From Ginglymostoma cirratum (lineage: Eukaryota), in contig JAHRHZ010000102.1 in assembly GCA_024137785.1 (NCBI GenBank), positions 1,048,220 to 1,112,219 of the forward strand: 64,000 bases of DNA. Direction: 5' to 3'. The position numbers were made by a program, and so were the translations under genes. Position 1 is the stretch's first letter. Each line of letters starts with the position of its first letter. Shown one piece after another: positions 1 through 61,488 of the stretch. A model generated the notes under the pieces. It did not search any database. It was given only the letters and a program-made list of their open reading frames with translations, and was not told the DNA's origin.

Positions 1-3000
1 GATCTCAAAATGACCATCACATGAAGATCTAATGGAGTCACTGAAATAACTGGGACATGAATATCATAAACTTCCACATTGGCTGTTTCTTTACTCTTAA
101 ATGATTCAAAACCCTGCAATTCTCCCAAATAACATTGTGGGTGACCCCACACCTCAAAGACTGCAGTGCCAGAAACCACCATCTTCTCAATGAGGGCAAC
201 TGGGATGGGCAATAAGTGCTGACCTAGACATTGATACTATACCCCATGAGTTGATTTGAAAATGAGGGAAAATGACATCCAAGACTGAGCCATGTTCATT
301 CTGACAGTGGGTGAAGTGGGAGGGTCAGAGGGTTTCTTTCTGCTGGACTGGCCGCTCTCAAGACTTTGCTTCTAGTGGGGATGATGCTGTTTGAGTCTGG
401 GACTGCACATTCCCAAGGAAATGATCCCCAAAATCTGATGAAGCAAATTTATTTTGTACTAGATAGGAAATGATGTTTTCCTCATCACTACAATTAGATC
501 AGAAGTAAATATGTTTGTCTTTGTTCCATTGAGTCTTTCGCCCAATCAACTCAATTCGTCTCCGTCAGTATTTATGCTCCACATTCTTCCCTTTCATCTC
601 CCCTATCAGCAGATCCTTCTATTTCTTTCTCCCTCACATATGCATCCAACTTCTTAAATATATTCCTCTGTTCAGCTCCATCTCACGCTCTTGGAGTGAA
701 TTGCACGTTCTGACCTGTCGCACGGTAAAGAGGTTTCTCATGAAGTCACGATGGATTTTTAAATAACAAAGTGCAAATGATAGAGTGGTGATAAAGAGAA
801 CCACACCCCTTTAACGTGTGGTCTGTAAATATCCTGTTCCGGTTTTCTTGCTAATTAGCATATATTAATTTAAATGTGATAACTATTTTATTTGCTTATG
901 AATCATTGGCATCACTGGGCAGAGCCAGATTTATTGCCCATCACTGACCACCCTGGAGAGGATGGGGCCACCTATAGTCCATGTACTGTCGGTAGATCCA
1001 CGGTGCCATTAAGGGAGACTTCCAGGAATTTGACCAAGCGACACAGAAGGAACATGATATATTCCCAGGTCAAAGCCAGAAGTCACACAACACCAGGTTT
1101 AAGTCCAACAGGTTTATTTGAAATCATAGACTTTTGGGACGTTCCTCTTTCGCCAGGTGAAGCACTGCATTATTACTTTGTTACACATCGTAAGAAAGTG
1201 ATAAAGTCAGGTGCAGCGTTCAGAAAGCTTGTGATTTCAAATACACCTGTTGATCTATAACCTGGTGTCATCTGACTTCTGACTTTGTCCACCCCAATCC
1301 GACACCAGCACCTCCACATCATATTTCCAGGCCAACACGGTATGTGGCCTAGAGGGGATCTAGCAGGTGGTAGATCCCATGTGACTGCTGCCCCTGTCCT
1401 TCTGAATGGTAAAGACTGCAGATTCAGAAGTTGTGCTGTCAGCGGAGCCTTGCTGAGTCACTGCAGTGCATCTTGTAGATGGTACAGACTGCTGCCACTG
1501 TGCATCGGTGGTGAAGGGAGTACAGGGCCGTAGTTTGGGTGCAAATCAAGAGGGCTGTTTTGTGTTAGATTGTATTAAACCTGATGTAAGGCTTTTGAAA
1601 TTAAAAAAAAAAGCAAACATTGTCATATGAAACTGTCCACAAAGTGAAATATTGGTTTTTGATAGTTACCTCTGGATCAGACAAGTGAATGGAATGTAGT
1701 CAAGTTGGAAAATGATATCAAAGTGGGAATAAAAGACATGTCCTGGAGACATTCACATTAGGTTAGACATCATGAGAAAGTGATAAAGTCTCAGATGAGA
1801 TTCCTTCAGAATAAAGTCTTCCCACTGCAAGCACTAACCCCATTACACCCTTTCCTGTCCAATATATGCTTGTTACGTGTAGTTATTGAAAATGAAAATT
1901 AACATTTTGTCCACACTCCTCATGTCATCACTGTTAGTGAAAAATAACCCCCACCCTTCTTTCACTTCACCCTGGTGCATCCTGTGTGGTTACAGTAGAG
2001 GCAGAGACAGGTTACTCATACCCCTGCTCCCACTGCTCTGGATCTCAATGTTGTACGTTTACCAAACACAGTTTTATCTTTACCAATGTAGAAGAAACCT
2101 AAACCTGAACCAATCAAGAACAGATCGTTGATTTACACTAATCTCTAATTTGAAGCCCGATTCCAGCATTCACCGTTGTTCTTCCTCTGACTCTAAACCC
2201 AGTCAGAAACGAAATTCTGTTTCGTGCATAGGAGCTCTGAGCTATGGAAGACAGTAGCTGGGACACATTTCTTTTCCACAGCAGGATTAACCCACACCGT
2301 GGATTGGCGGTCAGCGAAGAGAGACGTGAAAGAGTAAAGTGCCATATGATCCCCTCTGTGTGACCCTGAAGGATGTGTCCCTGCTGAAGTTCTGTTGCTG
2401 CCATACGAATCTGCCCCACCCTGAAATTGTCCTTTCTGAGCTCCAGGTGCCGTTCAATCCTCTGGGCAAATACAACAATCTACAGTGATGTGCTGAAGCA
2501 TAGCTGATTTATTTTACATTTCTCTGGAATATAAACTTTAGTCCAATTTGACAGGTTACAAACATCATCAGAAACAAACTCCAAATGTCAGAACAAAGGT
2601 GTCAGAAAATTACAGTGCAGATCAAGGCCATTACTTTAAAATTTATTTGTATGATGTGGGTCTCGCTGACCACCAGCTTTACTTGGCCTGTCATATTTTG
2701 TGTTGCCTGAAATAGAACCACCCAGGCTTTGCAGCTTTCTGGACTCACCATGGAGACCAACAATTTCAGACTGTGAAGTCTGCCCCCAATTTGTTTACAT
2801 TTCTTGTTTCAATTTGTTTCTGTGTCTGCTGCATACTTGGTTCCAGGCACATCTTTTGTTTCTTTGTTTCTTTTCCAGCGCCATCTCCATTCCCCATGAC
2901 CTTGAAGGACTAATAACATTTCTGCAGTTTAATCTCTCCTGCCTTCCCCCTGTGACAGACCGCCTTCTTGCCCTTGTCTCACCCTCACTTTACTCAAAAC

Positions 3001-5770
3001 CTGTTACATTTCTGATGGGTCCCAGACCCCTGTGACATCACCGCGCCCCCGGGTCAGTGGCATGAGTTTTGAATTATCTTCCTCCAGAGAGAATCTGAAA
3101 TCTTTGTGGCTGCAGCTTTCCCAGATTTTATTTTGGAACAAAAACAGCGAAGTTGTTTCAGAGGTGAGGTTTTTTTTTGAGCCTTCACCCACAATTTAGT
3201 GTCTTTAGAGCTAAGCTGTAATCCTTCCAGAGTCCAAAAATGTTCAGGTTAGATGGATTGGCCACACTATATTACTAGTGTGCAGATTAGATGGTTGAGT
3301 TAGGCATGGTAAATGTGGGGGTTATGGGAATAGGATAGAAAGTCAGTGCGTACTCAATGGGCCAAACGACCTCTTTCTGCACTGTCGGGATTTTGTGATT
3401 CTAACCAGTTGTGATCATGGTCACGTTTTCCTCATGTCAGCCCACACATAACCAGGTTCATTCAGATGATGTATTCATGCTGCCTTTGTGATTTTGTGGG
3501 TTCTTACTCAGACCCTTTTTGGTTTACACAGTGTAAATGAGAATGAATTTGTAAACAGAAATTTTCCAACCAAAATCCCTTGCAGATTAGGAACTATTTC
3601 TGCTGCTGGCATCACTCACAAGGACCAGGAAAATAAAGGTTCAGTCACAAATCTTACTGGAACACAGGTTATAATTGCCCGGAAAGACTGAACAGCTTAA
3701 AACTCTTTCCTCAAGAAAACAGGAGGCTGAGAGTTAAGCTGATACAAATGGGAAGCTTTGTTCCTGTGAAATGAAATCATTGGATCTTAAACAAATAATG
3801 GGAATCAGTACTGAGGAAGAGTGACTCGACCCAAAACATTAACTCTGATTTCTGTCCACAGATGGCACTAGACCTGCTGAGCTTTTCCGCAATTTCTGTT
3901 TTTGTTTCTGATATACAGCTTCTGCAGTTCTTTCGGTTTATAAAAATTGAATCTGTCGCATTTTTCATTGCCCTGAGGTCATCAAAGGAACTGTCTAAAG
4001 GTGCATCTTTCTTTCTGTCTGTCTGCCTGAGTTAACAATCAGATGGAGAGGTCACTGACTTTTCTCCACAAATCCACGATTGAATCAGCCTTCCTCACAC
4101 TCTCACGCCCGTCACCACTCGCTGGGTCATGGAGAATGGCTGTTAGAATGGGAGCTTCCTTTGATGTGGCCTGAACTTGTGCTTCTGCCCACTTCCCAGT
4201 TCCCTGCATTAATTCCAGATGCCTCTCGTCTGCCCAATAGTGTTGTTGAAGAACTTGAGAGGAGAGCGGACTGAAACTAAGAAATTAAAGAGTCAGATGA
4301 AAGAGCAAGAGAAAAACAAACAGGTTTTTGTGGATCCCAAGGGGATGAGACTCCAGGATCTGTCTGTTGTGACTGTTCACACGGTAACAAAAGACAATAT
4401 TCTCTGATGAGGGTCAAACCTGGGCAGGAGGAGACAGAGCACTGAATAGCAACAGATTTAGTTCAAACACAGGAGATTTATTCAGCCAGTAATACATGTA
4501 GTGTAATAGTCATGGATGAGAAGTGAGTAGTGAGGGGGAAATATTGCCACAAACTGCAGATGGACAACTTTTATAGAAACAGCAGTAGACCATTCAGGCC
4601 CTCAAGCTTGTTCTGTCATTCACTGAGATCATTGCCTGGTCTGTGGCTCAACTTTCAATTTCCAAAACCCACCAAGCCTATTAATGAGGCTCCTCTGAAA
4701 CAGACAAGGTGAATATTGAAAAGCCTAAAAAACTGCAGATGCAGGGAAATCAGAAACAAAAACAGATTGCTGGAAAAATTCAGCAGGTCTGGCAGCATCT
4801 ATGGAGAGAAATCAGAGCTAACCTTTCAGATTCAGTGACCCTTTGAGTGACCAAAAGCAGCTGACCATTCCGTCTTTTCTGTAACACTCTCTGGGACAGG
4901 TTATGGTGTGAGGGCCATGAGATTGTCAATAACAACTGTGAAAACAGCAGGATATGCTCAATCAGAATAAAACACATTTTGGTCTTTCACTTTCAAATCA
5001 ACTATAACAATTTATTCACTAATTATTTCAGAAACAGGATAAGAGACCAGAAAATCAACTCAGTGCCATTGGGTCTGGGAACCATTGTTAACTCTGACCA
5101 GGTCTGGCCTTCGTGTGAGTCCATACCATAATGACAATATTGATTCTTAACCATCCTCTGGGCAGTTAGATCGGATGATGTGTGCTTGCTGAGCTTGTGG
5201 TGCCATGATCCCATGAACAAGCACAAAAAATAATTCAATTACTGAAGTTACTTGTGAACCTGCTGTTGTTTCATCAAGCTAGATGACTGAGTGATTTTTT
5301 CCCCCCACACTCATAGCAGGTGAACGACCTCTCTCCAGTGCGTATTTGCTGGTGTACAGTGAGGGTTGATGATATCCTGAACGCAGCCCCACAGTGAGAC
5401 CTCCTGAATGGTCTCCCTTCAGTGTGAACATGTTGATGGTACATCAGTCCACTTGAGCTTTTATAGCACTTCCCACAATCTGCACATTTAAAAGGGTCAC
5501 TCTTCAGAGTGAACCTGTTGGTGTTTCGACAGAAATCATTCCCGCACCTGGAGAAGATGAATGGTCTCTCCCTAGTGTGGACTCAGTCTTGTGTCAGCAG
5601 GTGGGATGACTGAATGAATTCCTTGCCACACTTACAGCAGGGAAACAGCCCCATTCCAGTGTGAAACTGCTGTGAATACCTTCTCACACACGAAGCAGGT
5701 GAACGGTTTCTTTCTGGTGTGATTGGGCCGATGTGTTTGTAGCTTGGATGGCTATTTTACCTCCTTTTCC
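1..5770 (+). repeat. Segmental duplication copy A (runs off the window start)
   Basis: Colinear similarity to 38364-45470, e.g. 1-70 vs 38364-38430, 2200-2400 vs 41865-42060, 3540-3800 vs 43225-43480, 5000-5750 vs 44670-45440. Confidence 0.92.
1072..1320. mobile_element. Penelope-derived inverted-repeat mini-element
   Basis: 1078-1135 is an imperfect reverse complement of 1224-1280; flanked by imperfect direct repeats; absent from copy B near 40795. Confidence 0.65.
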
Positions 5771-12132: not shown

Positions 12133-13300
12133 TGGACTATACCAAAGGCTCATTGACTGTCAGTATAGATGTTAACTTTTTGTCCTTTCTCCTAGCTGGA
12201 GGGCAGCAGTTAGAGCTTTTAGATCATTGCTTTTATTTCAGCTACCTGGGAAGAGAAACATCCTTCTTTCCTCTCTTCTGCCAAAAGTTCCCCTTTCAAA
12301 TTAACCATGCCCCACTCCGTTGTGGCCTCACCATCATAGTACCTCCATGCCACATCTACAAACATGTATTTCATATCTGGCCCCTCTAATGGCTCCTCCT
12401 TAACTCAACCCTGTCTCTCTTCTTCATGCGGGGAATATAATCACATGTCTCTCTTTCTTGATTCACATAGCCTGCTGGGTTCTCTATAGTGTCTTTAAGA
12501 ACTTCCAAGTGATTATCTCCTGGCATCGCTGCAGCTTCACATTTGGCTCTCTCTCTCTGTAACACCTGTCTATTTGCCAGCTTCAACCAGCTGGACTGTT
12601 CTATGTGGGGAGTGTAATATCACCCTGCTCAGTTGTGTCAAGGGGGAAGATGTCATTAGTGCTCAGGTAGCACATTGGATGGCTCGAATACACGAGTATT
12701 ATCCCAACATGACCAAATCCGTTTTGCCTGAGCAGTAACTCACAGGCTATAGCTTGTTTCCATGTCTCTGTAACACTACTGCAGATTGTTTGCCCTTGCT
12801 CTCACTGCAGAAGAGGTGAAATGGCTTTTTCAGGTCACAAAGTCGTAGTGCTGGTATAGAGGCCAGTGTCTGTCTGACCTTGACAAACGCCATCTCTTGC
12901 TCAGGTCCCCATTCATTTTTTTTATTTTTTNNNNNNNNNNNNNNNNNNNNNNNNNNNNNNNNNNNNNNNNNNNNNNNNNNNNNNNNNNNNNNNNNNNNNN
13001 NNNNNNNNNNNNNNNNNNNNNNNNNNNNNNNNNNNNNNNNNNNNNNNNNNNNNNNNNNNNNNNNNNNNNNNCCCGCAACGCCCCCCCCCACCACTCCTTT
13101 TGTAAGGTGTTGCAGAGGTCCCACTAATTCACGGTAGTTTTCTACAAAGTTCCTGCAGTAGTTAAATAGTTCTAAGACTTATCTTATTCCTTTATCAGCA
13201 ACTGTTTCTTTCTTATCATTTCTGGTAATGTCATCTGACTGAGGCAACCAGAATATCATCTACATTTTTCAGTTAATCCATTCACATAATATGCTCTAAA
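12133..13300 (-). mobile_element. Endogenous retrovirus pol remnant (RT, connection, RNase H), internally deleted
   Basis: Minus-strand (Y)VDDILVAS at ~13240-13266, LFNYCRNFVENY, WGPEQEMAF...PAL.L.D..KPFHLF and GQKVNIYTDSQ*AFGIVH. A connection domain plus a separate RNase H is the retroviral layout. Confidence 0.85.
12931..13071. other. Assembly gap (141 N)
   Basis: Run of N. Confidence 1.
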
Positions 13301-14383
13301 ATTCAGTATATCCCAGATTCAGTTTTCTTAATTGGAGTATTTCTAATCCTTAATTTCCCTTTCCGTGGAACACTTCACCCAATAATACTAAAATAACATT
13401 ATACATGGACTCAAAATCTCTCCAGCTTTCTTCATCTCCATCCATCTTGAGAATACTTCTTGAATATGTTTCCTTCCTTGCCAATTTTTTGAATGGTTGT
13501 ATCATTGTAGATCAAAGGCGGTACTTGCATATGGAGTTAGTTGCCACTCAATATACATGGTATCAAACAATAGAGCTCTAAACTTCACCAGGCTCTACCT
13601 TCAATTTATGCTTCCCACCTTTTATTTTTCCCTGGGGACCAACTTTCAGTGTCTCCAATTTCTAAAATATACAACTAAACAAGCTCCATCCATTCCACAT
13701 TAAGCAGAATGGGTTAATTAGTATTAATCGACAATGGATTCAAAAAAGCGGGTGGAGTGTAAACTCTTGTAGGTAATTACATCATCTGTCTCTCCTCCTC
13801 CTGTGAGGAAATAAGTGAATATATTTTATGTAAAGGAAAAGACTGCCTCTTTTGTTAAATTCTCCTTTTTTAAAATTCCTCTATTAGTTTTCTCAGATTT
13901 TAGAACATGCCATCGGAATTTTGTTCAAAGAGAATTGTATTTCCAAGATTCCAAATTTGCTATTACTTGCATACTTTCACACCAGAGTACATTTACAGTG
14001 AGCAAATCTTATCATCTGGAATTAAAGATTCACTTGTGTTAAAATAGCATTTGGAATTTTGCTCTGGCCAGAAAATGAAATTCCAAACATGGTCAATTCT
14101 GGAATTTAAATTTACCCAAGTCCAAACAAAACATGAAGTCAATACCAATACGCAAATTTTTACCAAGCTTTACAAATCAGTTTGTTGAAAACAACATTTC
14201 GTCGCAGATTTTTGCTTTACACAACCACTGATGGTTTCTTAAAAGGACCTTACATTAGCCATATGTGTTCCACATTGATACAGGCATACGCACCACTTTC
14301 AAATCACCATACATTCCCAAAAAGGAAACTAATTTTAAAGTATCTCCTGAGCTTGGGCTTCCAGGGAACAAAACACTTCTATT

Positions 14384-17262
14384 GGGAAGGCGATGGCCTA
14401 GTGGCATTATCGCTAGACTATTAATCCAGGCACACAGATAATGTTCTTGGGACCCAGATTTGAATCCCACCAATGGCAGATGGTGGGATTAATTTCGAAA
14501 TTAAAAAAATTAGGAATCTACTGACAACTATGAAATCATTGTCAATTGTCAGAAAAACCCATCTGGTTCACTAATGTCCTTCAGGAAAGTAAATCTGCCA
14601 TCCTCACCTGGTCTGGTCTACATGTGACTCCAGACGCAGGGAAATGTGGTTGACTTTCAACTGCCCTCTGAAATGGCCGAGCAAGCTATTCAGTGTACCA
14701 GTCGCAACAAAGTCTCAAAGAAATGAAACCAGATGGATCACTTGACATTGACCTAGGCACCGGAAAAGTAAACAGCAGAAACTGCTCTGTCGACCCTGTA
14801 AACTCCTCCTCACTAACATCTGGCGGCTAGTGCCAAAATTGGAAAGCTGTCTCACAGATTAGACAAGCATCAACCTGACATAGTCATACTCACGGAATCA
14901 TACATTACAGACAATGCCCCAGACATTACCATCACCACTCCTGGATATGTCCTGTCTCGCTGCGAGGACAGACCCAGCAAAGGTCGCAGCACAGTGATAT
15001 ACAGTGGGGAGGCTGTTGCCCTAGGATTCCTCAACATTGACTCCTGATCCATTGAAGTCCCATCGCTTCAGGTTAAAGATGGGCAAGGAAGCCTCCTGTT
15101 GATTACCGCATACCATCCTCCCTCAGCTGATGAATTGGTACTCCTCCATGTTGAACAACACTTAGAGGAAGCACTGAGGATGGCAGGGGCACAAAATGTA
15201 ATCTGGGTGAGGAATTTCAAATGTCCATCACCAAGAGTGGTTCAGCATCTATACTACTGATTGAGCTGGTGGGGTTCAAAAGATCTGCAGCAGGTGGTGA
15301 GGGAAACAACAGGAGGGAAAAAACATACTTGGCGTCATCCTTCACCAACAGCCAGCTGCAGATGCATCTGTTGATTACAGTATCAGTAAGAGCGACTACT
15401 GCACATTCCTTGTGGAGACGAAGTCTCACTTTCACATTGAGAATAACTTCCATCGTGTTGTGTGGCACTATCATGCTAAATGGGACAGATTTCAAATAGA
15501 TCTAGCAACTCAAGACTGGGCCACATCCAGTCATGAATGGTGATGGACGATTAAACAACTCACTGGAGGATTAGACTCCACAAATATCCCCATCCTCAAT
15601 GATGGAAGAGCCTAGCACATCAGTGTATAAGAGATGGCTGAAGATTTTGCACTCAGCTTGGCATTCTCCAGTGGTCCCCAGCGTTACAGATACCAGTCTT
15701 CAGCAAATTTGATGCACTCCATGTGATATCAAGAAATGGTTGGCGACACTGGATACGACAAGGGCTATGGGCCCTGACAACATTCCAGAAATAGTATTGA
15801 AGACTTGTGCTCCAGAACTTGCTGCTCCCTGAGCCAAGTTGTTCCAGTACAGTTACAACACTGGCATCTACCCGACAATACAGAAAATTGCCCACGTATG
15901 TCCTGTACATAAAAAGCAGTACAAATCCAACCTGGCCAGTTACCACCCCATCAATCTACTGTTGATCATCAGTAAAGTGATGGAAGCTGTCATCAACAGT
16001 GTTGTCAAACAGGACCTGCTCAAAAATAACCTGCTCTGTGACGCCCAGTTTGGGTTCCATCAGGGCCTCTCAGCTCCTGATCTCATTACAGCCTTGGTTC
16101 AAACATGGACACCACAGTTGAATTCCAGAGGTGAGTTGAGAGTGACAGCCTTTGACATCAAGGCTGCATTCGACTGATTGTGACATCAAGGAGCCCTGGA
16201 AAAACTGGAATCAATGGGTATCAGGGGGCTAACTGTCTGGTAGTTAGTCATACTTGACACACAGGAAGAAGATCGTGGTTGTTGAGAGGTCAGTCATCTC
16301 AGCTCCAAGACATCTCTGCCAGAGTTCCTCCTCTCGTAGGCCCAACCGTCTTCAGATGCTTCATCAATGACCTTCCCTCCATCGTAACGTCAGAGGTGGG
16401 GATGTTTGCGGATGATTACACAATGTTCAGCATCATTCGTGACTCCTCAGACACTGAAGCAGTCCATGTCCAAAGGCAACAAGACCTGGACAGTATCCAG
16501 GCTTGGACTGACAAGTGGCAACCAACATACACGCCACACAAATACCAATAAGAGACAACCTAACCACCATCCCCTGATATTCAATGGTGTTACCAATACT
16601 GTATTCCCCACTATTAATATCCTGGGAGATATCATTGACCAGAAACTCAACTGGACTCACCACATAAATGCATTGATTACAAGAGCAGGTCTGAGGCTCG
16701 CAATACTGTGGTGAGTAACTCACCTGCTGACTCAGGAAAGCCTGTCCACCATTTATGAGGCATGAGTCAGGAGTGTGATGGAAAACACCCCACTTGCCTG
16801 GATGAGTGCAGTCCCAACAACACTCAAGAAGCTTGACACCATCCAGAAAAAGCACCCTGCTTGATTGGCACTGTATCCACTAGCATCCACTCCCTTCACT
16901 ACCGATGCTTGGTTGCAGCAGTGTGTACTATCTACAAGATGCACTGCAGAAATTCACCAAAGGTCCACAGACATCACCTTCCAAACTCATGACCACTTCC
17001 ATCTCAAAGGACAAGGGCATAAGATAAATGAGAACACTATCATCTTCAAGTTCCCCTCCAAACCACTCACCATCCTAACTTGGAAACCTATCGCTGTTCC
17101 TTCCCTCCCTAATGGCATTGTGGGTCAACCTACAGCAGGTGGACTGCAGTGGTTCAAGCAGGCAGCTCACCACCACCTTCTCAAGGGCAACTAGGGACGG
17201 GCAATAAACGCTGGCCAGCCAGTGATCCCACATCCCACCAATAAACGAATAGATTAATAAAA
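14384..17262 (+). mobile_element. Decayed near-full-length non-LTR retrotransposon (APE endonuclease + RT, CR1/L2-group) with tRNA-like 5' head
   Basis: A box TGGCCTAGTGG 14394-14404 and B-like GATTTGAATCC 14457-14467; endonuclease LLTNIW..QPDIVILTESY; RT YHPINLLLIISKVME, QFGF, DIKAAFD and MFADD; 3' tail gggcaataaacgctggcc. Confidence 0.9.
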
Positions 17263-17537
17263 TGGTACAAGATGACATTTAACAAATAACAAACAAAGGT
17301 GCATTCAAACCAGACCAAAAACAGTTAACACTTCTACATGGTTCAGTGAACTATCACAGCACTGAACCCTGATGTCCATTTCCTTTTCCAGTTATAACTG
17401 CCTGCCATCCTTTCTGGCTCCAGTTCTGCTAAAATATTAGCTACAGACCCGAATCCAGAGTCTGCCGCATTCCACCCTGGAATACAGGAGGTCTTTGGAG
17501 CAGCACATTATATTTCCCTTCTCATAAACATTTTCCT

Positions 17538-17557
17538 GAATCCAATCCTCATCACCA
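17538..17557 (-). other. Primer-binding site complementary to tRNA-Ser(GCT)
   Basis: TGGTGATGAGGATTGGATTC vs expected TGGCGACGAGGATGGGATTC (17/20, two CpG decays); 4 nt after an LTR CA end. Confidence 0.7.
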
Positions 17558-17561
17558 ACAT

Positions 17562-18028
17562 TGTCTTGGATGAAAGAGTGTATCCAAGCAGGTTTTGTTA
17601 TATTCAGTTAAACATAGTTTAAGACTCAACAACAGCAATTTGCTTAAATATGAATATTTATTGAGGAATAATAAAAGATGAAAGAGGAAGGGAAAAAAAT
17701 CAATAAGTAAAAGATGAAAAAAAGGTAAAAAAATAAGCCTCATACACTTCTGCTAGTCGAGGACTCCTCAATCGACGGCTGGTATAGAGGCTTAGGTTTG
17801 TTCCTGGCACCACGCGTGATCCCAGTCCAAGGTGAAGTCCAACAACTTGGAAAGAAACTCTTTTATATAGGGTAACAAACAGCACATACAGAAAAACGAT
17901 TTAATTTCACCATCTTTGATGCAGACAGGGATGTTCACAGGACACATTCAAGGTCATGCAGCTGTACAATATCATCAACAATTTTAGACCTTCAGCCTAC
18001 ACTATACACCAAAAGAGTTTTAAAGACA
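17562..18028 (-). mobile_element. 5' LTR of an LTR retroelement/ERV
   Basis: TGTCTT...AAGACA terminal inverted repeats, minus-strand TATATAAAAG (~17860-17869), AATAAA (~17657-17662), adjacent PBS. Confidence 0.6.
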
Positions 18029-18792
18029 GGCTGCCAGAAGTGAGGAAAATAAAGCCCAGAAGATTTATTGAGCATATTACTGGCATGTGAGAATGAGAAA
18101 TAAATCAAGGATTAAGCCTTTCAGCTTTCTAAAGATCCACTGAGATTAATGCAATAATGCTGGATTTATTATCTAACTCCTCCTTCATGCAGTATGTTGG
18201 TACACCTTGTCAAACAAGAAAATGTCCATTCCAATCTTGTATATTTCTGACAGATGCACATTCACAATATTGTCTAACAGAGAATCCCAAAGATTCAGAT
18301 CAAAATGTACAATCAATTCACTATTTACCTGAGCCCAAATATTTAAATGTTATTCAGAGACATTCTTCTCATTCTAGACTCCAGTGCCATATTGTGTGGT
18401 AATATGAGTTTAAGATGAAATGATATAGAATTACTTCAGTTATGTGCCTTGTACAAGTGGGGACGCAGCACAGCAACATCGTTTAAATACAACTGAAATA
18501 TACGATCAAAATTACCAACAAAACTTTACATAACTTGATGGCACAGATGGAGCTTGGCATATTCACTGCATTTCATTTACAAACTGGAGTGCAGAAACTG
18601 AGTTCAGATGAAAAGAATTCACGCATGGATTATTCCTACTCAAAGAGGCCTTAAGATGATCTCATCATGTTTCATCATATTTAGTACACTTGTCTTGCTT
18701 GTGCAAAAGTTACTTTTCCCTTAAGAGGTTCAATAAAGTACTTTATATTAAGAAAGAGAAACAGAACAGAAAGCAACAGAAAATAAATATGT

Positions 18793-18901
18793 GAGAGATA
18801 TATGATTTCTGATGAAGGGTTTAGGCCCGAAACGTCAAGTTTTCCTGCTCCTATGATGCTGCTTGACCTGCTGTGTTCATCCAGCCCCATGCTTGTTATC
18901 T
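18793..18901 (+). mobile_element. 109-bp Penelope-derived insertion with intact hammerhead motif (18805-18840)
   Basis: Nearly identical to 8840-8936; flanked by a perfect 15-bp direct repeat AGAAAATAAATATGT (18778-18792, 18902-18916). Confidence 0.85.
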
Positions 18902-19691
18902 AGAAAATAAATATGTACTTGCCTGATAACTTTTTCCCCAATGTCTCTTCTATGAAATTTTCTCTATCCTAATTCAACTTTGTCAAGTCTTCTATCGTTT
19001 ACTTACAGTTCATTTGACTTGTTCCTTCATCATTATCTTTGTATTTTCTTACTGCTTTCGCTTGTTTGCCTCCTACCTGAACCCTCTTGAATGCTGTTTC
19101 TTCCGTCTTTCCTTGTTGCCATTGTACTTACAGCAAGCGTTTATTCATCAATGGCTATTCTCCAATCGATTTCTTTTTTCAAATATGGTGTTAACCATTC
19201 GCTTAACACTTTCTTTATTTTTGTGAAATATTAATTTCAGTAAACAATGTGTTCATTCCCACACGTTCAATCTCATTTCTTCCATTACACAACTTAACAT
19301 GCATTTATATCTTGCATGGAAGCAGCAGAATAATAATTGTTACTTGTAATTTATTTGACATTATTGTAGAATCGTATGGATGCCTCTATCAAATACAACA
19401 TGGCTGACAATTTTGATTTGATCTGGAGGAACCAAGAACTATTTGTGAACTTTTGGACACGATAACATCAAAGAGATTTCATTTAACCAAGGTGCGTTTC
19501 TTTTTCAGTTTGACGTCAAAGTATTGGCCAGATTTATACGACAAATTCAACAGGTAACATTTTGCTTATACTAGTCATCAAGTGAACAGCAAAAAGAGTT
19601 TTCAAATCAAATAAATGAAGAATTTCCTATTATTTTGAAGCTGTCCATTGTAATTCTTTAGACAAAGCATTAATGTATGATTTATGTTTGC

Positions 19692-32049: not shown

Positions 32050-34232
32050 GATAGCAGACTAATTGCATTCAACTACATACCTTGGTTCTTTCCTGACAAA
32101 AGATGACCTAAATAATATTTCTAAAAAGGTGGGGGACACATGAGAGGGAAGAACTGAAGGAAATCAGAATTATTGGGGAAATTGTGCGGGAAATTTATGG
32201 GATTAAAAGCCAACAAATCCCAGCACCTGGTAATATGCACCCCAGAGTACTTAACAAAGTGGCCCGAGATACAATGGATACTCGGGGCTGAAACTTAGTG
32301 CTTGAAGCTAAATAGACAAAATTGATGGTCATCTTCAAGATTCTGTAGACTCTGGAATAATTCCCATGGCTGGAAGGTCGTTAATGTAACCTCACTAAAA
32401 AAGGAAGTAGAGAGAAAACATGGAATTAATAGACTGGTTAGCCTAAAACTGGAAAACAGTGACAGGGGTATTAATAACTGCAGATGCTGGAGTCAGAGAT
32501 AGCACAGTGTGGAGCTGGAGGCACACAGCAGGCCAGACAGCATCAGAGGAGCAGGAAAGTTGACTTTTCGGGTCAGGACCCTTCTTCAAAAAAGTTCTGA
32601 AAAATTTTCTGGAGAAGAGTCCCAAACCAAAAAGTCAGCTTTCCTGCTCCTCTGATGCTGCCTGGCCTGCTGTGTGTCTCCAGCTCCACACTGTGTAAAA
32701 ACAGTGACAGGAGAGAATGGAGTCAGTCAGCATGGGTTTAAGAACACAACATTCAGAGTTGATAAAGAGGCAGTGAATGTGAATTACTTGGGCTTTGAGA
32801 AGGCATTCGAAAGGTTTTCACAGAAAAAAAATAGCATGTAGAATTAAATCAAATGGGATTGGGGATACTGTATTGATGCAGATACAGAACTAGCTGGTAG
32901 ACAGGAAACAAAGAGTCAGAATAAACAGGTCGTTGTTTTGAGTGACAGCCAGTAACCAGCGTTGCACCGCAGGCATCAGTGCTTGGACCCCAGTTATTCA
33001 CAACGTTTGTTAATGATTTAGATGAAGAGATTTAAATGTCATATCTCCAAACTTGTGGCTGACATGTGATGAAGAGGATTGATGAAGGCAGAGTGGTGGA
33101 GGATGTGGTCTATATGGACTTCAGAAATGCATTCTACAAGGTTCCACGTGGTAGAATGATTAGCAAAGTTAGCTCAGGTGGAATACAGGGAGAACCAACC
33201 ATTTGGATACATGGCTTAAAGGTAGGAGGCAGACTGTGGTGGTGTTGGGTTGCTTTTCAGAATGGAGACAAGAGATGTGCCGCAAGGATCAGTGCTAGGT
33301 CCATTGATTTCTGTCATTTATATAAATGATTTGGATACAAATATAGCAGGCATAGTTAGGAAGTTTAGACAGTGAAGAAACTTGTCTCACAGTATGACGG
33401 GACCTTGATCAGATGGGTTGAGGAGTGGCAGATGGAAATATGTAAATGTGAGGTGCTCTATATTGGTAGGGCAAATCAGGGCAGGACTTTTATACTTTAT
33501 GGTAAGATCCTGGGGAATGTTGCTGAAAAAGAAAAGACTGAGGGGTTGCAAGTTTATAGTTCCTTGAAAGTGAGGTCATGGGTGATAGGGTAGTGAAGAC
33601 GACATTTGGTACGCTTGCCTCTATAGGTCAGTGCATTGAGGAAAGGAGTTGGGAGGTCATGATGTGGCTGTACAGGAAATTGGTTAGGCCACTTTTCGAA
33701 TCCTGCATGCAGATCTGGTCTGTCTGCTTTAGGAAGGATGTTGTTAAACTTGAAAGGGTTCAGAAAAGATGTACAAGGATGTTGCCAGGGTTTAAGCTAT
33801 AGGAAAGGGCTGAACAGGCTGGGGCTATTTTTCCCTGGAGCGTTGCGACTGAGGGGTGACCTTACAGACGTTTATAAAATCATGAGGGGCATGGATAGGG
33901 TAAATAAACAAGGTCTTTTTCCTGGGATGGGGGAGTCCAAAACTAGACAGCATAGGTTTAAGGTGAAAGGGAAAGACTTAAAAGGGACTTGAGGTGCAAC
34001 TTTTTCAAACAGCAGGTAGTGTATGTATGGAATGAACTGCCAGAGGATGTGGTAGAGGATGGTACAAATACAACATTTAAAACGCATTGTGAATGAGTAC
34101 GTGAATAGGAATGGTTTCGATGGGCATGGTCCAAATGCTGGCAAATGGGACTAGATTTATTTAGGATATCTGGTCAGCAAGGATGGGTTGGACTGAAGGG
34201 TTTGTTTCTGTGCTGTATAACTGTATGCCTCT
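32050..34232 (+). mobile_element. Two abutting CR1 fragments (older 32050-33060, younger 33060-34232)
   Basis: DVVYMDFRNAFYKVP, LVRPLFE.C.Q.WS, LERVQKR and CR1 tail. Confidence 0.85.
32467..32696. mobile_element. Inverted-dimer Penelope-derived mini-element with two decayed hammerheads
   Basis: ~32493-32590 is the reverse complement of ~32605-32696; flanked by a 14-bp direct repeat AAAACAGTGACAGG. Confidence 0.8.
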
Positions 34233-34420
34233 AAAATACATTGTTTATGGCAATTTTATGTTAGAAAAATGTAACAATTGATTTTTGTTACAATGTTCTA
34301 GATTAGTCTTTGACATAAAACATTTTATACAAATATATCTGATATAAACCTGTGTAAGCTTAAATTCAGTCTTTTTTGTATTGAATTAATAAATATTGTA
34401 ATATTTTGAATATATGTGAT

Positions 34421-34672
34421 AATGTCACTGTGCTCACAATCCAAAACCCCAGGTTAATGTTCTGGGAACATGAGTTCAGTTTCCACCTCTGCAAGTGGTG
34501 AAATTTAAAATTGTGAAAATTGAAATTGTGTAAAACCCATCAGGTTCATGAAAGGAAATCTGCTGTTCTTACCTGGTTTGGGCTACATTTGACTTCAGAC
34601 CCACTTTTAACTGTCCCTCTCAGCAATTAGGGACAATAACATCCCGCACATCCTGTGAATGGATAAGAAAGA
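34421..34672 (+). mobile_element. tRNA-derived SINE sharing head and tail with the 14384-17262 LINE
   Basis: Matches 14400-14670, then jumps to the gcaattaggg...cacatcc tail; another copy at 59738-59975 (-). Confidence 0.7.
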
Positions 34673-44300: not shown

Positions 44301-45470
44301 ATGAGATCATTGCTTGATCTATGGCCTAACTTTCAATTTCCAAAACCCACCAAGCCTGTCAATGAGGCTCCACTGAAACAGACAAGGTGAATAGTTACAA
44401 ACCTAAAAAACCTGCAGATGCAGGAGATTCAGAAACAAAAACAGAAATTATTGGAAACATTCAGCAGGCCTGGCAGCATCTGTGGAGAGAAACCAGAGGT
44501 AACCTTTTGGGTCCAGTGACACTTTGAGTAACCAGATGCAGCCGGCCATTCCCTCTTATCTGTAACACTGTCTGGGACAGGTTATAGTGCGAGGGCAATG
44601 AGCTTGTCAATAACAACTGAGAAACAGCAGGACATGCTCAATAAGAATAAACTCATGTTCGTCTTTCACTTTTAAAGCAACCGTAATCATTTATTCATTA
44701 TCATTTCAGAAACTGGATAAGAGACCAGAAAATCAATTCTTTGTACCATTGGGTCTGGGAACCATTGTTAATTCTGACCTGGTCTGACCTACATGTGAAT
44801 CCATACCACAGCAACGAGCTTGATTCTTAACCATCCTCTGGGCAGTTAGAACGGATGATAAATGCTTACAGAGCTCATGATGCCACAATCCCATAAATGA
44901 ACAAAAAAAGTCCAATTACTGAAGTTAATTGTGAGCCCGCTGGTGTTTCATCAAGCTAGAGGACCGAGTGATTTTTTTCTTCCCCACACACATAGCAGGT
45001 GAATGACCTCTTCACAGTGTGCATTCGCTGGTGTACAGTGAGGGTTGATGATGTCCTGAACCCAGGCCCACAGTGAGAGCATTTGAATGGTATCCCTTCG
45101 GTGTCAACATGTTTGTGGTACATCGGTCCACTTGAGCTTTTGTAGCACTTCCACAATGTGCACATTAAAACGGTGTCTCTTCAGAGTGAACCTGTTGGTG
45201 TTTCAACAGGCTGGATGACCGGGAGAAATCCTTCCCACACTCTGAGCAGGTGAATGGTCTCTCCCCAGTGTGGACTCGCTGTTGTGTCAGGAGATGGAAT
45301 GACTGAATGAATTACTTGCCACACTCACAGCAGGGAAACAGCCCCTTTCCAATGTGAAACCGCTGTGAATGCCTTCTCACACACGAAGCAGGAGAATAGT
45401 TTCTACCTGGTGTGATTGCACCAGTATGTTTGCAGCTTGGCCGGGTAATCGAAATTCCTCCCACTGTCCC
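38364..45470 (+). repeat. Segmental duplication copy B
   Basis: Same-orientation diverged paralogue of 1-5770, with an extra ~1.4 kb block (39125-40560). Confidence 0.92.
41577..41740. mobile_element. Penelope-derived inverted mini-element
   Basis: Inverted arms and 13-bp TSD TGTAGAGGAAAGC (41564-41576, 41741-41753); empty site in copy A at ~2087-2100. Confidence 0.8.
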
Positions 45471-58000: not shown

Positions 58001-59060
58001 TAACATAACATCCCAGCTTCTATACTCAGTGCTTCAACCCATGAAGATGAACATGTTGAATGCCTTCTTCACCACCCTTGTCTACCTGTGACACTGCTTT
58101 CCATGAACTATGTACTGGTGCTCCTGGGTCCCTCTGTTTCACAACAGTCCTCAGGACCTTACCATTTACTGTATAATTCCTACCTTAATTATATTGAATT
58201 GCATTTGCCAATCCTCAGCCCACTTCCCCATCTGATCAAGATCTCTCTGTAAATTTTAATCGCCTTCCTTGCTATCAACACCAGCTTCTAACTTTATATC
58301 ACCCACAAACTTAGTGATCATGCCTTGTATATTCACATCCAGATCATTTACGTAAATAACAAATAACAAAGGTCCCAGCAGTGACGCCTCTGGCACACCA
58401 CTAGTCACAGACCTCCAGTCTGAGAAACAGCCTTCAACCATCACCTTCTGCTTCCTACCATTGAGCCAATTTTGAATCAAATTAGCTAGCTATCCCTGGA
58501 TCCCATGGCTAGCCTGCCATGCGGGACCTTGTCAAAGGTATACTAAAGTCCCAGAGACAACACCCACTGCCCTATCCTCCTCTATGCTCTTGGTTACCTT
58601 TTAGAAAAACTGTGAAGAAAATTGTCAGACATGACTTCCTGCACACAAATCCACACTGACTATCCCTAATCAGACCTTGGCTATCCAAATGTTGGTTGAT
58701 CCTGTCCCTCAGTATCCTCTCCAATAACTTGCCTGCCATTGCTGTCAGGCTCACTGGCCTTTGCTACCTTTCTTCAACAATGGAACAAAGTTAGCCGCCC
58801 TTCAGTCTTCCAGAACTTCACCAGTTGCTAAAGATGAAGCCAAAATCTCTGCAAGGACCTCTGCAATTTCGTCCCTAGCCTCCCACAATGTCCGAGGATG
58901 GATTTGATCAGGCCCAGGGAATTTATCCACCTTAGTGCGCTTAAAGGCAGTCCAAAACATCTGCACTTGTTTCCCTTATTTCCTCAGCATCCATGAATCT
59001 CTCCTCAGTAAACATTCAGGAGAAATAATCATTCAAAATCCCGCCAGTCTTCTGTGGCTC
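55065..59060 (-). mobile_element. Stack of nested CR1 fragments (with HE1 SINE at 56420-56660)
   Basis: Repeated minus-strand CR1 RT motifs (SCLTNLIEVFDEVT, VYLDYRKDFDKVP, SGVPEASLLGPLLFVIYVNDLD) and several 3' tails. Confidence 0.85.
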
Positions 59061-59229: not shown

Positions 59230-60510
59230 CAAGCAAATGGGTGTTGGACAATCAGAAAGGACTAATTGATAATCAAGTTGAGTGTGGGCTCTTAGGGAAA
59301 AGTGACCACAGTGGATTGAATTCTTCATGAAGATGGAGAGTGATATTGTTGTTTCTGACTCTCAGGTCCTGTAATTAAATGAAATAAGTTATACTGGTCT
59401 GACACATGAGCTGCTTGTGATAAATTGTGGATCAGTATTTCAATGGATGATGGGAGATCGATGATGGTAAACATTTAAAGAGGAAGTCGACAAGCTATGA
59501 AAGTTATTCATCTCAGTCTGGCATGAGAACAAAATGGGAAACATGGTCAAACCATGGCAGAGAAAGGGAAATGAATGGGTATTAAATTTAAGGAAATGGC
59601 ATTCAAATTAGGTAAACAAACTAACAGACTGAGGATTGGGAACAGTTTAGATTTCAGCAAAGGGAGACAAAGGGATTTATTAAGAGGGAGAAAATTGAAT
59701 ATGAGACTGCCCTTGCAGGGACCATACAAACCAATGGCTTTTTTTTTATTCATTCACAGTATGTGGGCATCGCTAGCTAAGCCAGAATTTATTGCCCATC
59801 CCTGATTGTCCGGAGGGCTGTCAAGAGCTGACTGCATTGCTTTGGACTGGAGTCACTTATATACCAGACCGAGCAAGGATTACAGTTTCTTCCCCTGAAG
59901 GATACTAGTGAGCCAGATGGGTTTTTCCTGATAATCAAAAACAGTTTCCTGATCATCATTAAACTCTTAGTTGAACATTGACAGCAAAAGATTAGTCAAG
60001 AAGAAATTAGGGTCTCCCTGCAGTCAGAAACATGGACATTATAATGGGGTACAAAATGATGGCAGACCAATTACGTACGTCTTAGATTGTCAAAAAAGAG
60101 GACACGAATAACGACCCAAAATTAAAGGGTTCCCAGGGTCTAACGGGAAAGTAGAATTGAAAGAAATTGCTATTAGTAGGAAAATGATATTGGGAAAGCT
60201 CATGAGACAACCGGCAGATAAATCCCCAGAGATTGATAACCTTTATCTCAGAGTAACTGAGGGAGTGGCCCTAGAAATGGCTGATGCGCGAGTGGTTATC
60301 CTGAAATTCTATTGATTCTCCGAGTTCCTGTGGATTAGAGGGTACTTAACATTGCCCAAGTATTTAAGAAGGGAATCAGAGCGAAAATAGGGCATTTCAA
60401 AGCATTGATGGTGGGAAAAAGTGTTAGGGTCCACTGTAAAAGTTGGGATAACGGAGTACTTGGAAGATAGCGACAAGATCAGACAGAGTCGGCAGAACCT
60501 TTGTCTGTGA
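59230..60510 (+). mobile_element. Decayed CR1 ORF2 middle fragment, interrupted by a SINE
   Basis: LGKSDH and DKSP..D.LY.RV remnants. Confidence 0.65.
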
Positions 60511-60954
60511 GATCTCTGAGATTCTCTGTTGGGCATGAATTCCCTCCACGCCACTCTCCATCCTGACTTGAAGAAGTATCACTATTCTTTGAGAGTTACT
60601 GGGTCAAAATCCCGAATTCCCTCCCCAACAGTATTGTGGGTTCACCTCATGGACTGTAGTGGTTCTCAAAGGCAGATCACTATCATCTTCTCAATGGCAA
60701 CTCAGCTCGGCAAAGCCCACAGAAATTTGAGAAAAGCATTATCAAGGCCAACTGGGGATATGGAATAGAAGCCTAAATAGATCAGCTTTGACCTTTTTTG
60801 AGGCTCACTGGGCAGAATTAACTGCTCTGACTCCTATTTTCTACGTTCTCAACTCTTTGTATCGAAATGCATCTCAGCGGGAATGGTGCATTCCCTGGAA
60901 CTTGGAAGGATGAGGGCTGATTTGATTACAACTCAATTCTCAGGAGTTTTGAAC

Positions 60955-61068: not shown

Positions 61069-61488
61069 TAACAACGATGACATCAAGCTTTCTTTTGTAA
61101 CATCATAGTCACAGATCTCAGTTTGAGTTAAGCAAGGGCCACTGAGCTCCTGATCTCTTTACATTCTTGCTGCAAACACGGACCGAACAGCTGAATTCCA
61201 AATATGGGAATGTCAATCTGCTATTTTAAGGCTCCGTTTGACAGAGCATTGTGTCAAGGAATCATAGCAAAATTGGGATCAACAGGAATCAGAGAATATT
61301 ATTCTCCCTTTGAAGGCAGGTATTTGAAAAGATTGCATCTTCAGACCTGAGTAGATAAAAACAAAGTGAATTTATTCAAACTTTTACCACATACATGCAG
61401 AAGAGATCTCTAATTTTAGTGTCTCCAGTTTCGGGACAATCCACTATTTACAGCTCAAAACAGAATATTAAGACATTTTCACGTTAGA

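What the first reader, a model, noticed from the sequence alone, without database searches (positions are those of the whole stretch)
14384..17262. Candidate RNA polymerase III-transcribed LINE: tRNA-like head, no ORF1, sense strand almost free of TTTT
Seen: the element begins with a consensus A box (TGGCCTAGTGG) and a B-like box, and the APE endonuclease starts only ~400 bp later, leaving no room for ORF1. By eye the ~2.9 kb sense strand has one TTTT (15645-15648) against ~13 AAAA runs, whereas the ordinary CR1 at 33066-34230 has at least 6 TTTT in ~1.15 kb. No in-frame ATG is visible in the ~130 nt before the endonuclease. Known: T4+ terminates vertebrate Pol III, and LINEs are normally Pol II transcripts. 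Inference: the family is under selection to be read through by Pol III from an internal tRNA promoter and would need cap-independent or non-AUG translation.
Basis: partly seen in the sequence, partly recalled or inferred. Interest (0 to 1): 0.78.

Follow-up and report, generated by a model that had tools for sequence, protein, structure and literature searches.

The report
Shark LINE with a SINE head
This is a dead copy of a very abundant shark jumping gene (a LINE) whose front end is the same tRNA-type sequence that heads its small parasite (a SINE), an unusual design, but whether the LINE is really read by RNA polymerase III is not shown.

Summary
The layout is real. Window 14384-17262 is a decayed (17 in-frame stops, 8 frame changes) single-ORF endonuclease/reverse-transcriptase LINE. 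Its first 287 nt are the head and body of an abundant SINE, and its last ~76 nt are that SINE's tail. The SINE looks like this LINE with 14671-17186 removed. The linkage is not a one-off: contigs from two other organisms bridge the SINE-body/LINE boundary, two whale-shark gene models carry SINE body upstream of the same leader and endonuclease, and 12 earlier first-reader notes describe the same layout elsewhere in this genome (unchecked; so the scan found this before on other DNA).

The T-run count is correct (one TTTT, 14 AAAA runs). It is low against mononucleotide shuffles (P 0.008) but not against dinucleotide (0.066) or codon-preserving shuffles (0.12).

The claim of no in-frame ATG is wrong. 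A good-context ATG at 14673-14675, three bases after the SINE-shared part, opens the family's ORF; this copy is one base short just after it.

No covariance model recognises the head as a tRNA; only the A box and a B-like box support that label. Pol III transcription of the LINE remains open (about 0.3). I found no published description of a LINE with this kind of head.

The parts
14384..14470 (+). tRNA-type head: A box at 14394-14404 and B-like box at 14457-14467. The 5' end of the element is at about 14384.
   Evidence: Sequence. Depth rises about 30-fold between bins 14214-14327 and 14328-14441. The window SINE at 34420-34670 aligns to this head from 14399. No tRNA call by ARAGORN or Rfam.
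14463..14490 (+). 10-bp hairpin directly after the B-like box
   Evidence: Fold of 14384-14490: -37.8 kcal/mol, z -2.70. Stem shown.
14471..14670 (+). SINE-shared body, the rest of the LINE 5' UTR. Segment 14556-14669 is the most abundant of the whole stretch.
   Evidence: Matches window SINE copies. Summed depth in run X1 is 1.35 million against 46,000 for the next bin. SINE-form joints run 14670->17187 (X13) and 14635->17187 (X19).
14673..14675 (+). Start codon of the single ORF (G at -3, G at +4). A second in-frame Met lies at 14723-14725.
   Evidence: Whale-shark models P0153 and P0157 begin here and run into the endonuclease. P0155 and P0158 begin at the second Met.
14794..15500 (+). APE-type endonuclease region, broken by stops and frame changes
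   Evidence: tblastn with P0151-P0160 and with full-length relatives P0029 and P0095, which carry Exo_endo_phos(_2) plus RVT_1. The window pieces themselves give no Pfam endonuclease hit.
15530..16900 (+). Reverse transcriptase region
   Evidence: RVT_1 on pieces 15908-16174 (E 5.5e-6, 26.7 bits, below the 29.6 cut-off) and 16336-16545 (E 0.0099). 15,505 library proteins match at E<=0.001.
15645..15648 (+). The only T4 run on the sense strand
17192..17194 (+). Stop codon (TAG) of the ORF
17187..17262 (+). 3' tail shared with the SINE. AATAAA at 17203, 17240 and 17256.
   Evidence: Alignments to window SINE tails, joints, AATAAA positions. Fold not distinctive, z -0.70.
34420..34670 (+). SINE copy of the same family with head, body (with gaps) and tail joined directly
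59739..59972 (-). SINE copy: body joined directly to tail, A-rich end
44771..44905 (+). 5'-truncated SINE copy: end of body plus tail

Best explanation
Window 14384-17262 is a dead, nearly full-length copy of a very abundant, old shark LINE family. The family encodes one ORF (leader, APE-type endonuclease, reverse transcriptase) and no ORF1. Its whole 5' UTR (289 nt) is a tRNA-type SINE module: a head with A and B boxes plus a conserved body.

The partner SINE is the same element without the ORF: 5' UTR up to 14670, joined to the last two codons, the stop codon and the 3' UTR from 17187. This looks like an internal-deletion ('bipartite') derivative of the LINE. The shared 3' tail lets the LINE's enzyme copy both. 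The shared 5' module gives both an internal promoter and a defined first base.

Shown here: the layout, its recurrence in this genome and in other sharks, and the conventional AUG three bases after the SINE-shared part.

Inferred: the SINE is made by Pol III from the head. For the 3-kb LINE RNA the polymerase is unresolved. My split is about 0.45 for a Pol II mRNA starting at or near the head, about 0.3 for Pol III, and the rest for other routes. I favour Pol II because the family is highly successful and opens with a good-context AUG. The T-run paucity is real, but this copy's low Phe content and codon use explain it about as well as selection would.
For: Layout: head, body, ATG, endonuclease, RT, stop and tail lie on one strand with no SINE tail in between.

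SINE as LINE minus ORF: 3 of 3 window SINE copies join body directly to tail, and contigs show joints 14670->17187 (X13) and 14635->17187 (X19).

Recurrence:
- Of the 32 contig pieces listed out of about 515,000 laid, 2 bridge the boundary at 14671 with at least 31 nt on each side. These are X13 record 9 (14549-14796) and X3 record 25 (14577-14838), from organisms C and B.
- The LINE-only leader bin 14670-14783 has about the same summed depth as the endonuclease start (46,000 against 56,000 in X1).
- Of 13 whale-shark or ENA proteins related to the endonuclease N-terminus, 2 reach upstream of the start codon (P0151, P0159). Both carry SINE-body translation, and P0159 runs through the junction. 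None of the 13 shows another sequence directly upstream of the leader.
- 12 first-reader notes describe the same layout elsewhere in this genome; they are unchecked.

Start codon: P0153 and P0157 start at the ATG equivalent.

No ORF1: depth drops upstream of 14384.

Old and dead: 17 in-frame stops and 8 frame changes. In the 1.84-billion-protein library every hit at 55% identity or more is 256 aa or shorter.
Against: The two bridging contigs cover body to leader, not the A/B-box head. Depth is a per-contig figure, and the tool warns against ranking parts of a stretch by it.

The whale-shark proteins are ab initio gene models with possible false introns; P0151 skips about 150 nt between body and leader.

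The direction (LINE to SINE by deletion, or a LINE lineage capturing a SINE 5' part) is not settled.

The head is not recognised as a tRNA by any model.

Against my Pol II preference: eight upstream ATGs in the 5' UTR would hamper cap-dependent scanning. A LINE that starts exactly with an A box at +11 is what a Pol III unit looks like. This sense strand has far fewer T runs than the two other LINEs in the window: 1 in 2.9 kb against 6 in 1.0 kb and 8 in 2.8 kb.
Confidence: 0.72

Rival explanations
1. [quoted passage not shown] It is kept nearly free of T4 terminators by selection, dispenses with ORF1, and is translated from an uncapped RNA.
For: There is a perfect A box 10 nt from the element's first base, and a B-like box 52 nt later whose main mismatch is a CpG decay. 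The head-LINE linkage is family-wide. One T4 lies in 2879 nt against 6.6 expected from base content (P 0.008), and this is the lowest of 291 windows. TTT occurs 13 times against about 37 expected from base content (my arithmetic); within the ORF span 14832-17016 it is 10 against 28.6 expected. Phe codons are 4 TTT against 13 TTC, while Lys is 19 AAA against 20 AAG. The other two LINEs in the window are not depleted. Eight upstream ATGs argue against plain scanning. In the L1/Alu system, Pol III-made templates need no ORF1p (Kroutter 2009, PMC2666806, abstract read).
Against: Codon-preserving shuffles give 3.25 T4 runs (P 0.12), dinucleotide shuffles P 0.066, and a trinucleotide model 1.14, so one copy gives no significant excess depletion. 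The ORF opens with a good-context AUG. AATAAA signals sit at 17203, 17240 and 17256 near the 3' end. From my own knowledge, not from a call: no vertebrate Pol III transcript of about 3 kb and no Pol III-made LINE is known. No RNA evidence exists: all 4 runs laid were contigs, and the one guessed to be RNA has a depth profile like the DNA runs.
Confidence: 0.3
2. Secondary capture. The SINE arose first in the usual way (tRNA head, then body, then LINE tail). A LINE lineage later acquired the SINE's head and body at its 5' end, by template switching or recombination, and that chimera became the successful master.
For: Template switching that joins small-RNA or SINE parts to LINE parts is the accepted origin of SINEs and of U6-L1-type chimeras (Kojima 2018, PMC5786205, passages; Luchetti 2017, PMC5499810, passages). 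The body segment is far more abundant than the head (1.35 million against 100,000 in X1), as expected if the body is a widely shared conserved SINE domain. Published shark SINE descriptions report only tail homology to the LINE.
Against: The SINE-shared part ends 3 nt before the LINE's start codon, and the SINE keeps only the last two codons plus the 3' UTR. That precision is simplest as an ORF deletion. A short similar string (CCCTCT / CCTTCT) lies at both deletion edges, 14664-14669 and 17176-17181; this is weak evidence. The body shows no significant similarity to the LINE's pre-tail 3' region (P 0.08-0.77), so the body is not just a longer LINE tail.
Confidence: 0.3
3. One-off artefact. 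A SINE copy, or a single template-switch chimera, happens to lie next to a 5'-truncated LINE in this locus only.
For: No target-site duplication flanks the unit: the only shared string is a 6-mer away from the ends. No second head-bearing LINE copy is present in the 64-kb window.
Against: No SINE tail lies between body and LINE. The same junction appears in contigs of organisms B and C and in whale-shark model P0159. 12 earlier notes describe the same layout elsewhere in this genome.
Confidence: 0.03
4. Processing signal. The tRNA-like head serves as an RNase P-type 5' processing site that cuts the LINE RNA out of longer host co-transcripts. This would be analogous to the ribozymes at the 5' ends of R2 and some other LINEs (recalled, not from a call).
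For: It would explain a defined 5' end at the head, a LINE without an evident Pol II promoter, and a 5' UTR unsuited to scanning (8 upstream ATGs).
Against: The head does not fold or score as a tRNA in this copy. No data on transcripts.
Confidence: 0.07

Closest known systems
SacSINE1 / LmeSINE1 Deu-SINEs with an L2-2_CM-type partner LINE (Luchetti et al. 2017, PMC5499810; section 7 and passages read)
   Same: A tRNA-headed SINE with A and B boxes and a conserved central domain, present in sharks including the whale shark, with a tail homologous to the 3' end of an L2-type LINE. The conserved domain is at about 124-258 of that SINE. Here the most abundant segment lies at about 170-290 from the start.
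   Different: The paper describes only tail homology to the LINE. Here the LINE also carries the head and body as its 5' UTR. Identity of this SINE with SacSINE1 could not be tested: no reference sequence was available, and supplementary figures S1 and S2 are closed.
HE1 V-SINE / HER1 LINE of sharks and rays (Ogiwara et al. 1999, seen only as a row in the table of Ohshima 2013, PMC3747384)
   Same: A tRNA-derived SINE and a partner LINE of elasmobranchs sharing a 3' tail.
   Different: I could not read the 1999 or 2002 papers (not held). Whether HER1's 5' end is known or resembles this one is unknown to me.
Bipartite non-autonomous LINE derivatives: RIME/ingi, NARTc/L1Tc, Vingi derivatives, Bov-A (Kojima 2018, PMC5786205, abstract and passages)
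   Same: The short element consists of only the 5' and 3' parts of its autonomous LINE, made by internal deletion.
   Different: Those are taken to be Pol II units, with a tRNA head added later by template switch. Kojima found 5' contributions to SINE bodies only from the RTE and Vingi clades. Here the autonomous element itself carries the tRNA-type head.
Single-ORF L2-clade LINEs such as UnaL2 and ZfL2-2 (recalled, not from a call)
   Same: Endonuclease plus RT in one ORF, no ORF1, 3' tail recognised stringently and shared with SINEs.
   Different: I know of no tRNA-type head reported on them. Clade membership of this family was not tested here.
U6-L1 and other small-RNA/LINE chimeras made by template switching (cited in Luchetti 2017 passages; bioRxiv 10.1101/2025.02.02.635956, listing only)
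   Same: A Pol III-type small-RNA sequence at the 5' end joined to LINE sequence.
   Different: Those are sporadic dead-on-arrival insertions with 5'-truncated LINE parts and varied junctions. Here a single junction just before the start codon recurs across copies and species.

Membership tests
APE-type non-LTR retrotransposon (LINE) | Reverse transcriptase domain | tested here: met
   RVT_1 on two window pieces (E 5.5e-6 and 0.0099, both below Pfam's cut-off because the pieces are short and decayed). 15,505 library matches at E<=0.001. Relatives P0029 and P0095 score RVT_1 at 1e-38.
APE-type non-LTR retrotransposon (LINE) | N-terminal apurinic/apyrimidinic-type endonuclease | tested here: met
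   By homology only. 14838-15218 aligns to the endonuclease part of P0029 and P0095, which carry Exo_endo_phos and Exo_endo_phos_2. Family fragment P0154 has a weak Exo_endo_phos hit, E 0.0014. The window pieces give 0 Pfam hits. Catalytic residues were not checked.
Single-ORF (ORF1-less) LINE | No second ORF upstream of the EN-RT ORF within the element | tested here: met
   289-nt 5' UTR, all shared with the SINE up to 14670. The ORF start is at 14673. Family depth ends at about 14384.
tRNA-derived SINE (SINE2) with partner LINE | SINE and LINE share the 3' tail | tested here: met
   3 of 3 window SINE copies align to 17187-17262. Joints to 17187 in contigs.
tRNA-derived SINE (SINE2) with partner LINE | Head derived from a tRNA (cloverleaf or sequence similarity to a tRNA) | tested here: inconclusive
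   A box perfect and B-like box with 2 mismatches (consensus motifs recalled). ARAGORN finds 0 tRNAs. Rfam gives no tRNA hit at E<=1 or at E<=10. This copy is old and decayed.
Deu-SINE (SacSINE1) or V-SINE (HE1) superfamily | Central body matches the Deu or V conserved domain consensus | not testable with these tools
   No reference sequence is held. The relevant papers or supplements were not available (supplements closed).
Bipartite internal-deletion derivative of a LINE | The short element equals the 5' part plus the 3' part of the long one, with one junction | tested here: met
   Joint 14670->17187. Window SINEs. The body is not similar to the LINE pre-tail region.
RNA polymerase III type-2 transcription unit | A and B boxes at tRNA-like spacing downstream of the first base | tested here: met
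   A box at +11 to +21, B-like box at +74 to +84, 52 nt apart. Sequence level only.
RNA polymerase III type-2 transcription unit | No T4+ terminator inside the unit | tested here: not met
   One T4 at 15645-15648 in this copy. Whether it is ancestral is unknown. The depletion is not significant against codon-preserving shuffles.
RNA polymerase III type-2 transcription unit | Actual Pol III transcription (occupancy, 5' triphosphate, inhibitor profile) | not testable with these tools
   Only contigs could be laid, and no run is on record as RNA.

The most novel reading that the evidence does not exclude
An autonomous, ORF1-less LINE whose own promoter is a tRNA-derived Pol III head, so that a 3-kb protein-coding retrotransposon RNA is made by Pol III. 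Its SINE would then be simply its ORF-deleted form. This would also make a widely conserved SINE body domain the 5' UTR of a LINE, and it would reverse the usual order of SINE origin for this family.
Probability: 0.25. Interest if true: 0.9.

Novelty: new variant of a known kind. Interest (0 to 1): 0.6.

Why it matters
SINEs are thought to arise when a small Pol III RNA is fused to a LINE tail. The origin of their conserved middle 'bodies' is an open question, and Kojima 2018 found LINE 5' contributions only from the RTE and Vingi clades.

Here a LINE of another type carries the whole SINE front end, head included, as its 5' UTR, across shark species. This gives a concrete family in which to test three things:
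- whether a SINE can be born by simple deletion of a tRNA-headed LINE;
- whether a conserved SINE domain is a working LINE 5' UTR;
- whether a LINE can be driven by Pol III, which would tie in with the finding that Pol III templates need no ORF1p (Kroutter 2009).

If the LINE is made by Pol II, the case is still useful as an example of one 5' module serving two polymerases.

Tried and rejected
A 20-nt junction string found 2 metagenome loci that match over only 20-27 nt, so by chance. It found 0 in viral contigs and 0 in genome contigs.
- No intact family ORF exists in the protein libraries. The best full-length relatives are only about 34-37% identical (P0029, P0016, P0095, P0047, P0026).
- The endonuclease-piece search gave 1 hit. 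The P0151 search gave 13 proteins. The P0159 search added only P0163.
- tRNA detection failed three times.
- Idea rejected: the SINE body might be an older copy of the LINE's pre-tail 3' region. Local alignments are not better than shuffles (P 0.08-0.77).
- No target-site duplication was found.
- The 3' tail fold is not distinctive (z -0.70).
- Depth in the run guessed to be RNA (X19) resembles the DNA runs and says nothing about the polymerase.
- Literature: searches returned no paper describing a LINE with a tRNA-type head. Searches returned 0 papers. The library lacks most subscription journals; Ogiwara 2002 and Nishihara 2006 are not held; I did not look for Ogiwara 1999. So 'not in print' is only as good as these searches.
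- Supplements are closed. Figures S1 and S2 of Luchetti 2017 might show whether L2-2_CM shares more than the tail.
- The clade (L2 or CR1) was not determined.
Full report
WHAT IS THERE. Window 14384-17262 (+) is one element. It has these parts, in order:
- A head with the string TGGCCTAGTGG at 14394-14404 and a B-like box at 14457-14467.
- A 10-bp hairpin at 14463-14490.
- A body that runs to 14670.
- An ATG at 14673-14675.
- A leader of about 47 codons.
- Endonuclease homology from about 14794-14838.
- Reverse transcriptase (RVT_1 on 15908-16174 and 16336-16545).
- A TAG stop at 17192-17194.
- A 3' tail to about 17262.

The copy is dead. Along the frames set by protein matches there are 17 in-frame stops and 8 frame changes. 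The closest full-length relatives (P0029 and P0095, about 34-37% identical) carry Exo_endo_phos(_2) plus RVT_1.

THE SINE RELATION. The window holds three copies of a SINE: 34420-34670 (+), 59739-59972 (-) and 44771-44905 (+). In each, the body found at 14471-14670 is joined directly to the tail found at 17187-17262. The first copy also aligns to the head from 14399. Contigs of public runs show the same joint: 14670->17187 with one letter between in X13, and 14635->17187 in X19. So the SINE equals this LINE minus 14671-17186. That is the 5' UTR plus the last two codons, the stop codon and the 3' UTR. The SINE body is not a diverged copy of the LINE's pre-tail region (P 0.08-0.77 against shuffles).

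IS THE HEAD-LINE LINKAGE A ONE-OFF? No. Four lines of evidence bear on this.

(a) No SINE tail separates body and LINE.

(b) Contigs of four runs were laid at 80% likeness, and 21,000 to 241,000 contigs per run matched, so the family is enormous. Summed depth in X1 by bin:
- flanks: 1,300-3,400
- head bin: about 100,000
- 14556-14669: 1.35 million
- LINE-only leader 14670-14783: 46,000
- endonuclease start: 56,000
- 3' end: rising to 0.5-0.9 million, the usual 5'-truncation gradient

Of the 32 pieces listed (out of about 515,000), two bridge 14671 with at least 31 nt on both sides. These are X13 record 9 (14549-14796) and X3 record 25 (14577-14838), from organisms C and B. A third, X13 record 10, starts at 14649 and does not count as bridging. 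The tool warns that depth is per contig and should not rank parts of a stretch, so I use it only for the element's ends and the rough gradient.

(c) The endonuclease piece 14817-15044 found one protein, P0151. P0151 found 12 more. Most are whale-shark (Rhincodon typus) ab initio gene models from EukProt. A related RT fragment, P0048, is from Heptranchias perlo. The 13 proteins divide as follows:
- Two reach upstream of the start codon, and both carry SINE-body translation. P0151 residues 1-14 map to 14571-14612. P0159 residues 31-62 map from 14581 through the junction.
- Two begin at the ATG equivalent (P0153, P0157).
- Two begin at the next in-frame Met (P0155 and P0158, at 14723).
- One (P0152) starts in the leader in another frame.
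- Six start inside the endonuclease or have unrelated N-termini.
- None shows a different sequence directly upstream of the leader.

(d) Twelve first-reader notes describe the same layout on other pieces of this genome, mostly 3.2-4.3 kb long. They are unchecked AI notes and count only as leads.

The public collections I could scan hold no shark DNA with this junction.

THE START CODON. In the family there is one. P0153 and P0157 open with a peptide that matches the window's frame from 14673 and continue in one frame into the endonuclease. In the window the next residues map one base early (14693 instead of 14694), which is a one-base loss, and later frame changes and stops hide the frame. The context has G at -3 and G at +4. 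The ORF therefore starts three bases after the SINE-shared part, so non-AUG initiation is not needed. The 5' UTR does hold eight upstream ATGs, which is awkward for simple scanning.

THE T RUNS. The count is right: one T4+ (15645) and 14 A4+. Expected T4+ runs under each model:
- mononucleotide shuffles: 6.6 (P 0.008)
- dinucleotide shuffles: 4.0 (P 0.066)
- trinucleotide Markov model: 1.14
- synonymous-codon shuffles: 3.25 (P 0.12)
- codon-order shuffles: 3.39 (P 0.11)

The underlying signal is a shortage of TTT. Over the whole element TTT occurs 13 times against about 37 expected from base content (my arithmetic). Over the protein-matched span 14832-17016 it is 10 against 28.6 expected. This comes with few Phe codons (17 of 770) and 4 TTT against 13 TTC. 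The two other LINE fragments in the window are not depleted. The one at 33102-34087 has 6 T4 and 28 TTT (19 expected). The one at 56138-58954 (-) has 8 T4 and 55 TTT (54 expected). So the family is T-run-poor compared with its neighbours.

IS THE HEAD A tRNA? ARAGORN finds none in the window. Rfam gives no tRNA match at E<=1 over 13000-19000 or at E<=10 on 14370-14500. The label rests on the boxes, on their spacing and position at +11, and on the head being that of a SINE.

HOW IT MOST LIKELY WORKS. Shown: a single-ORF LINE and its ORF-less short form share both ends. Inferred from established knowledge of SINE/LINE pairs: the shared 3' tail is what the LINE's RT recognises, and the head's internal promoter makes SINE RNA by Pol III. 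For the LINE RNA I put about 0.45 on Pol II, about 0.3 on Pol III, about 0.07 on RNase P-type 5' processing of co-transcripts, and the rest on other routes.
- For Pol II: a conventional AUG, AATAAA near the 3' end, and a very successful family.
- For Pol III: an A box at +11 of the element, no ORF1, few T runs, and many upstream ATGs.
Direction is open. I favour deletion from a headed LINE because the cut is so exact around the ORF.

COMPARISON WITH WHAT IS KNOWN. Luchetti 2017 (section 7 and passages read) describes SacSINE1 in sharks, including the whale shark. It has a tRNA head, a Deu domain and a tail like the 3' end of L2-2_CM, and only the tail is related to the LINE. Ohshima 2013's table lists HE1/HER1 for sharks and rays. 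Kojima 2018 (abstract and passages) found LINE 5' parts in SINE bodies only for RTE and Vingi, and proposes that heads are added to bipartite LINEs afterwards. I could not test which named SINE this is. None of my searches returned a paper describing a LINE that carries the tRNA-type head itself. The library is incomplete and Repbase was not available, so the family may already be catalogued there.

VERDICT. The layout is real, family-wide and unusual. The Pol III reading is open and not supported by the T-run statistics on this copy, and the non-AUG claim is wrong. I class it as a new variant of a known kind and score interest at 0.6.

Noticed in passing
window 33102-34087 (+) and 56138-58954 (-): Two other LINE fragments of different families. 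Their sense strands are strongly C-poor (C 12-15%, G 31-33% at all codon positions) and not T-run-depleted. They served as controls.
   Followed up: partly
window 61119-61292, 60617-60702, 38483-38591, 122-246 (+); 1344-1521, 40687-40986 (-): Short fragments matching the RT or the 3' end of the same or a related LINE family (68-87% identity).
   Followed up: no
window 14100-14327 and 17292-17500: Both flanks of the element are themselves moderately repeated in the runs laid (summed depth in the hundreds to low thousands), with many shared differences. The LINE may sit inside another, lower-copy repeat.
   Followed up: no
window 16846-16915 and about 17101: Hundreds to about 1,500 contigs per DNA run end as loose ends here with a consensus unlike this copy. 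This copy therefore carries internal replacements or deletions, which fits its 2.9 kb against the 3.2-3.4 kb of other noted copies.
   Followed up: no
window 14664-14669 and 17176-17181: A similar 6-nt string (CCCTCT / CCTTCT) sits at both edges of the stretch that the SINE lacks. It could be microhomology from a template jump, or chance.
   Followed up: no
protein P0163 (JGI, 2270-nt contig): An endonuclease fragment of this shark LINE family sits on a JGI contig, so some host DNA of a shark or ray is in that collection, although the junction 20-mer did not find it.
   Followed up: no
window, whole: 141 N in the window. They were left untouched and are not near the finding.
   Followed up: no
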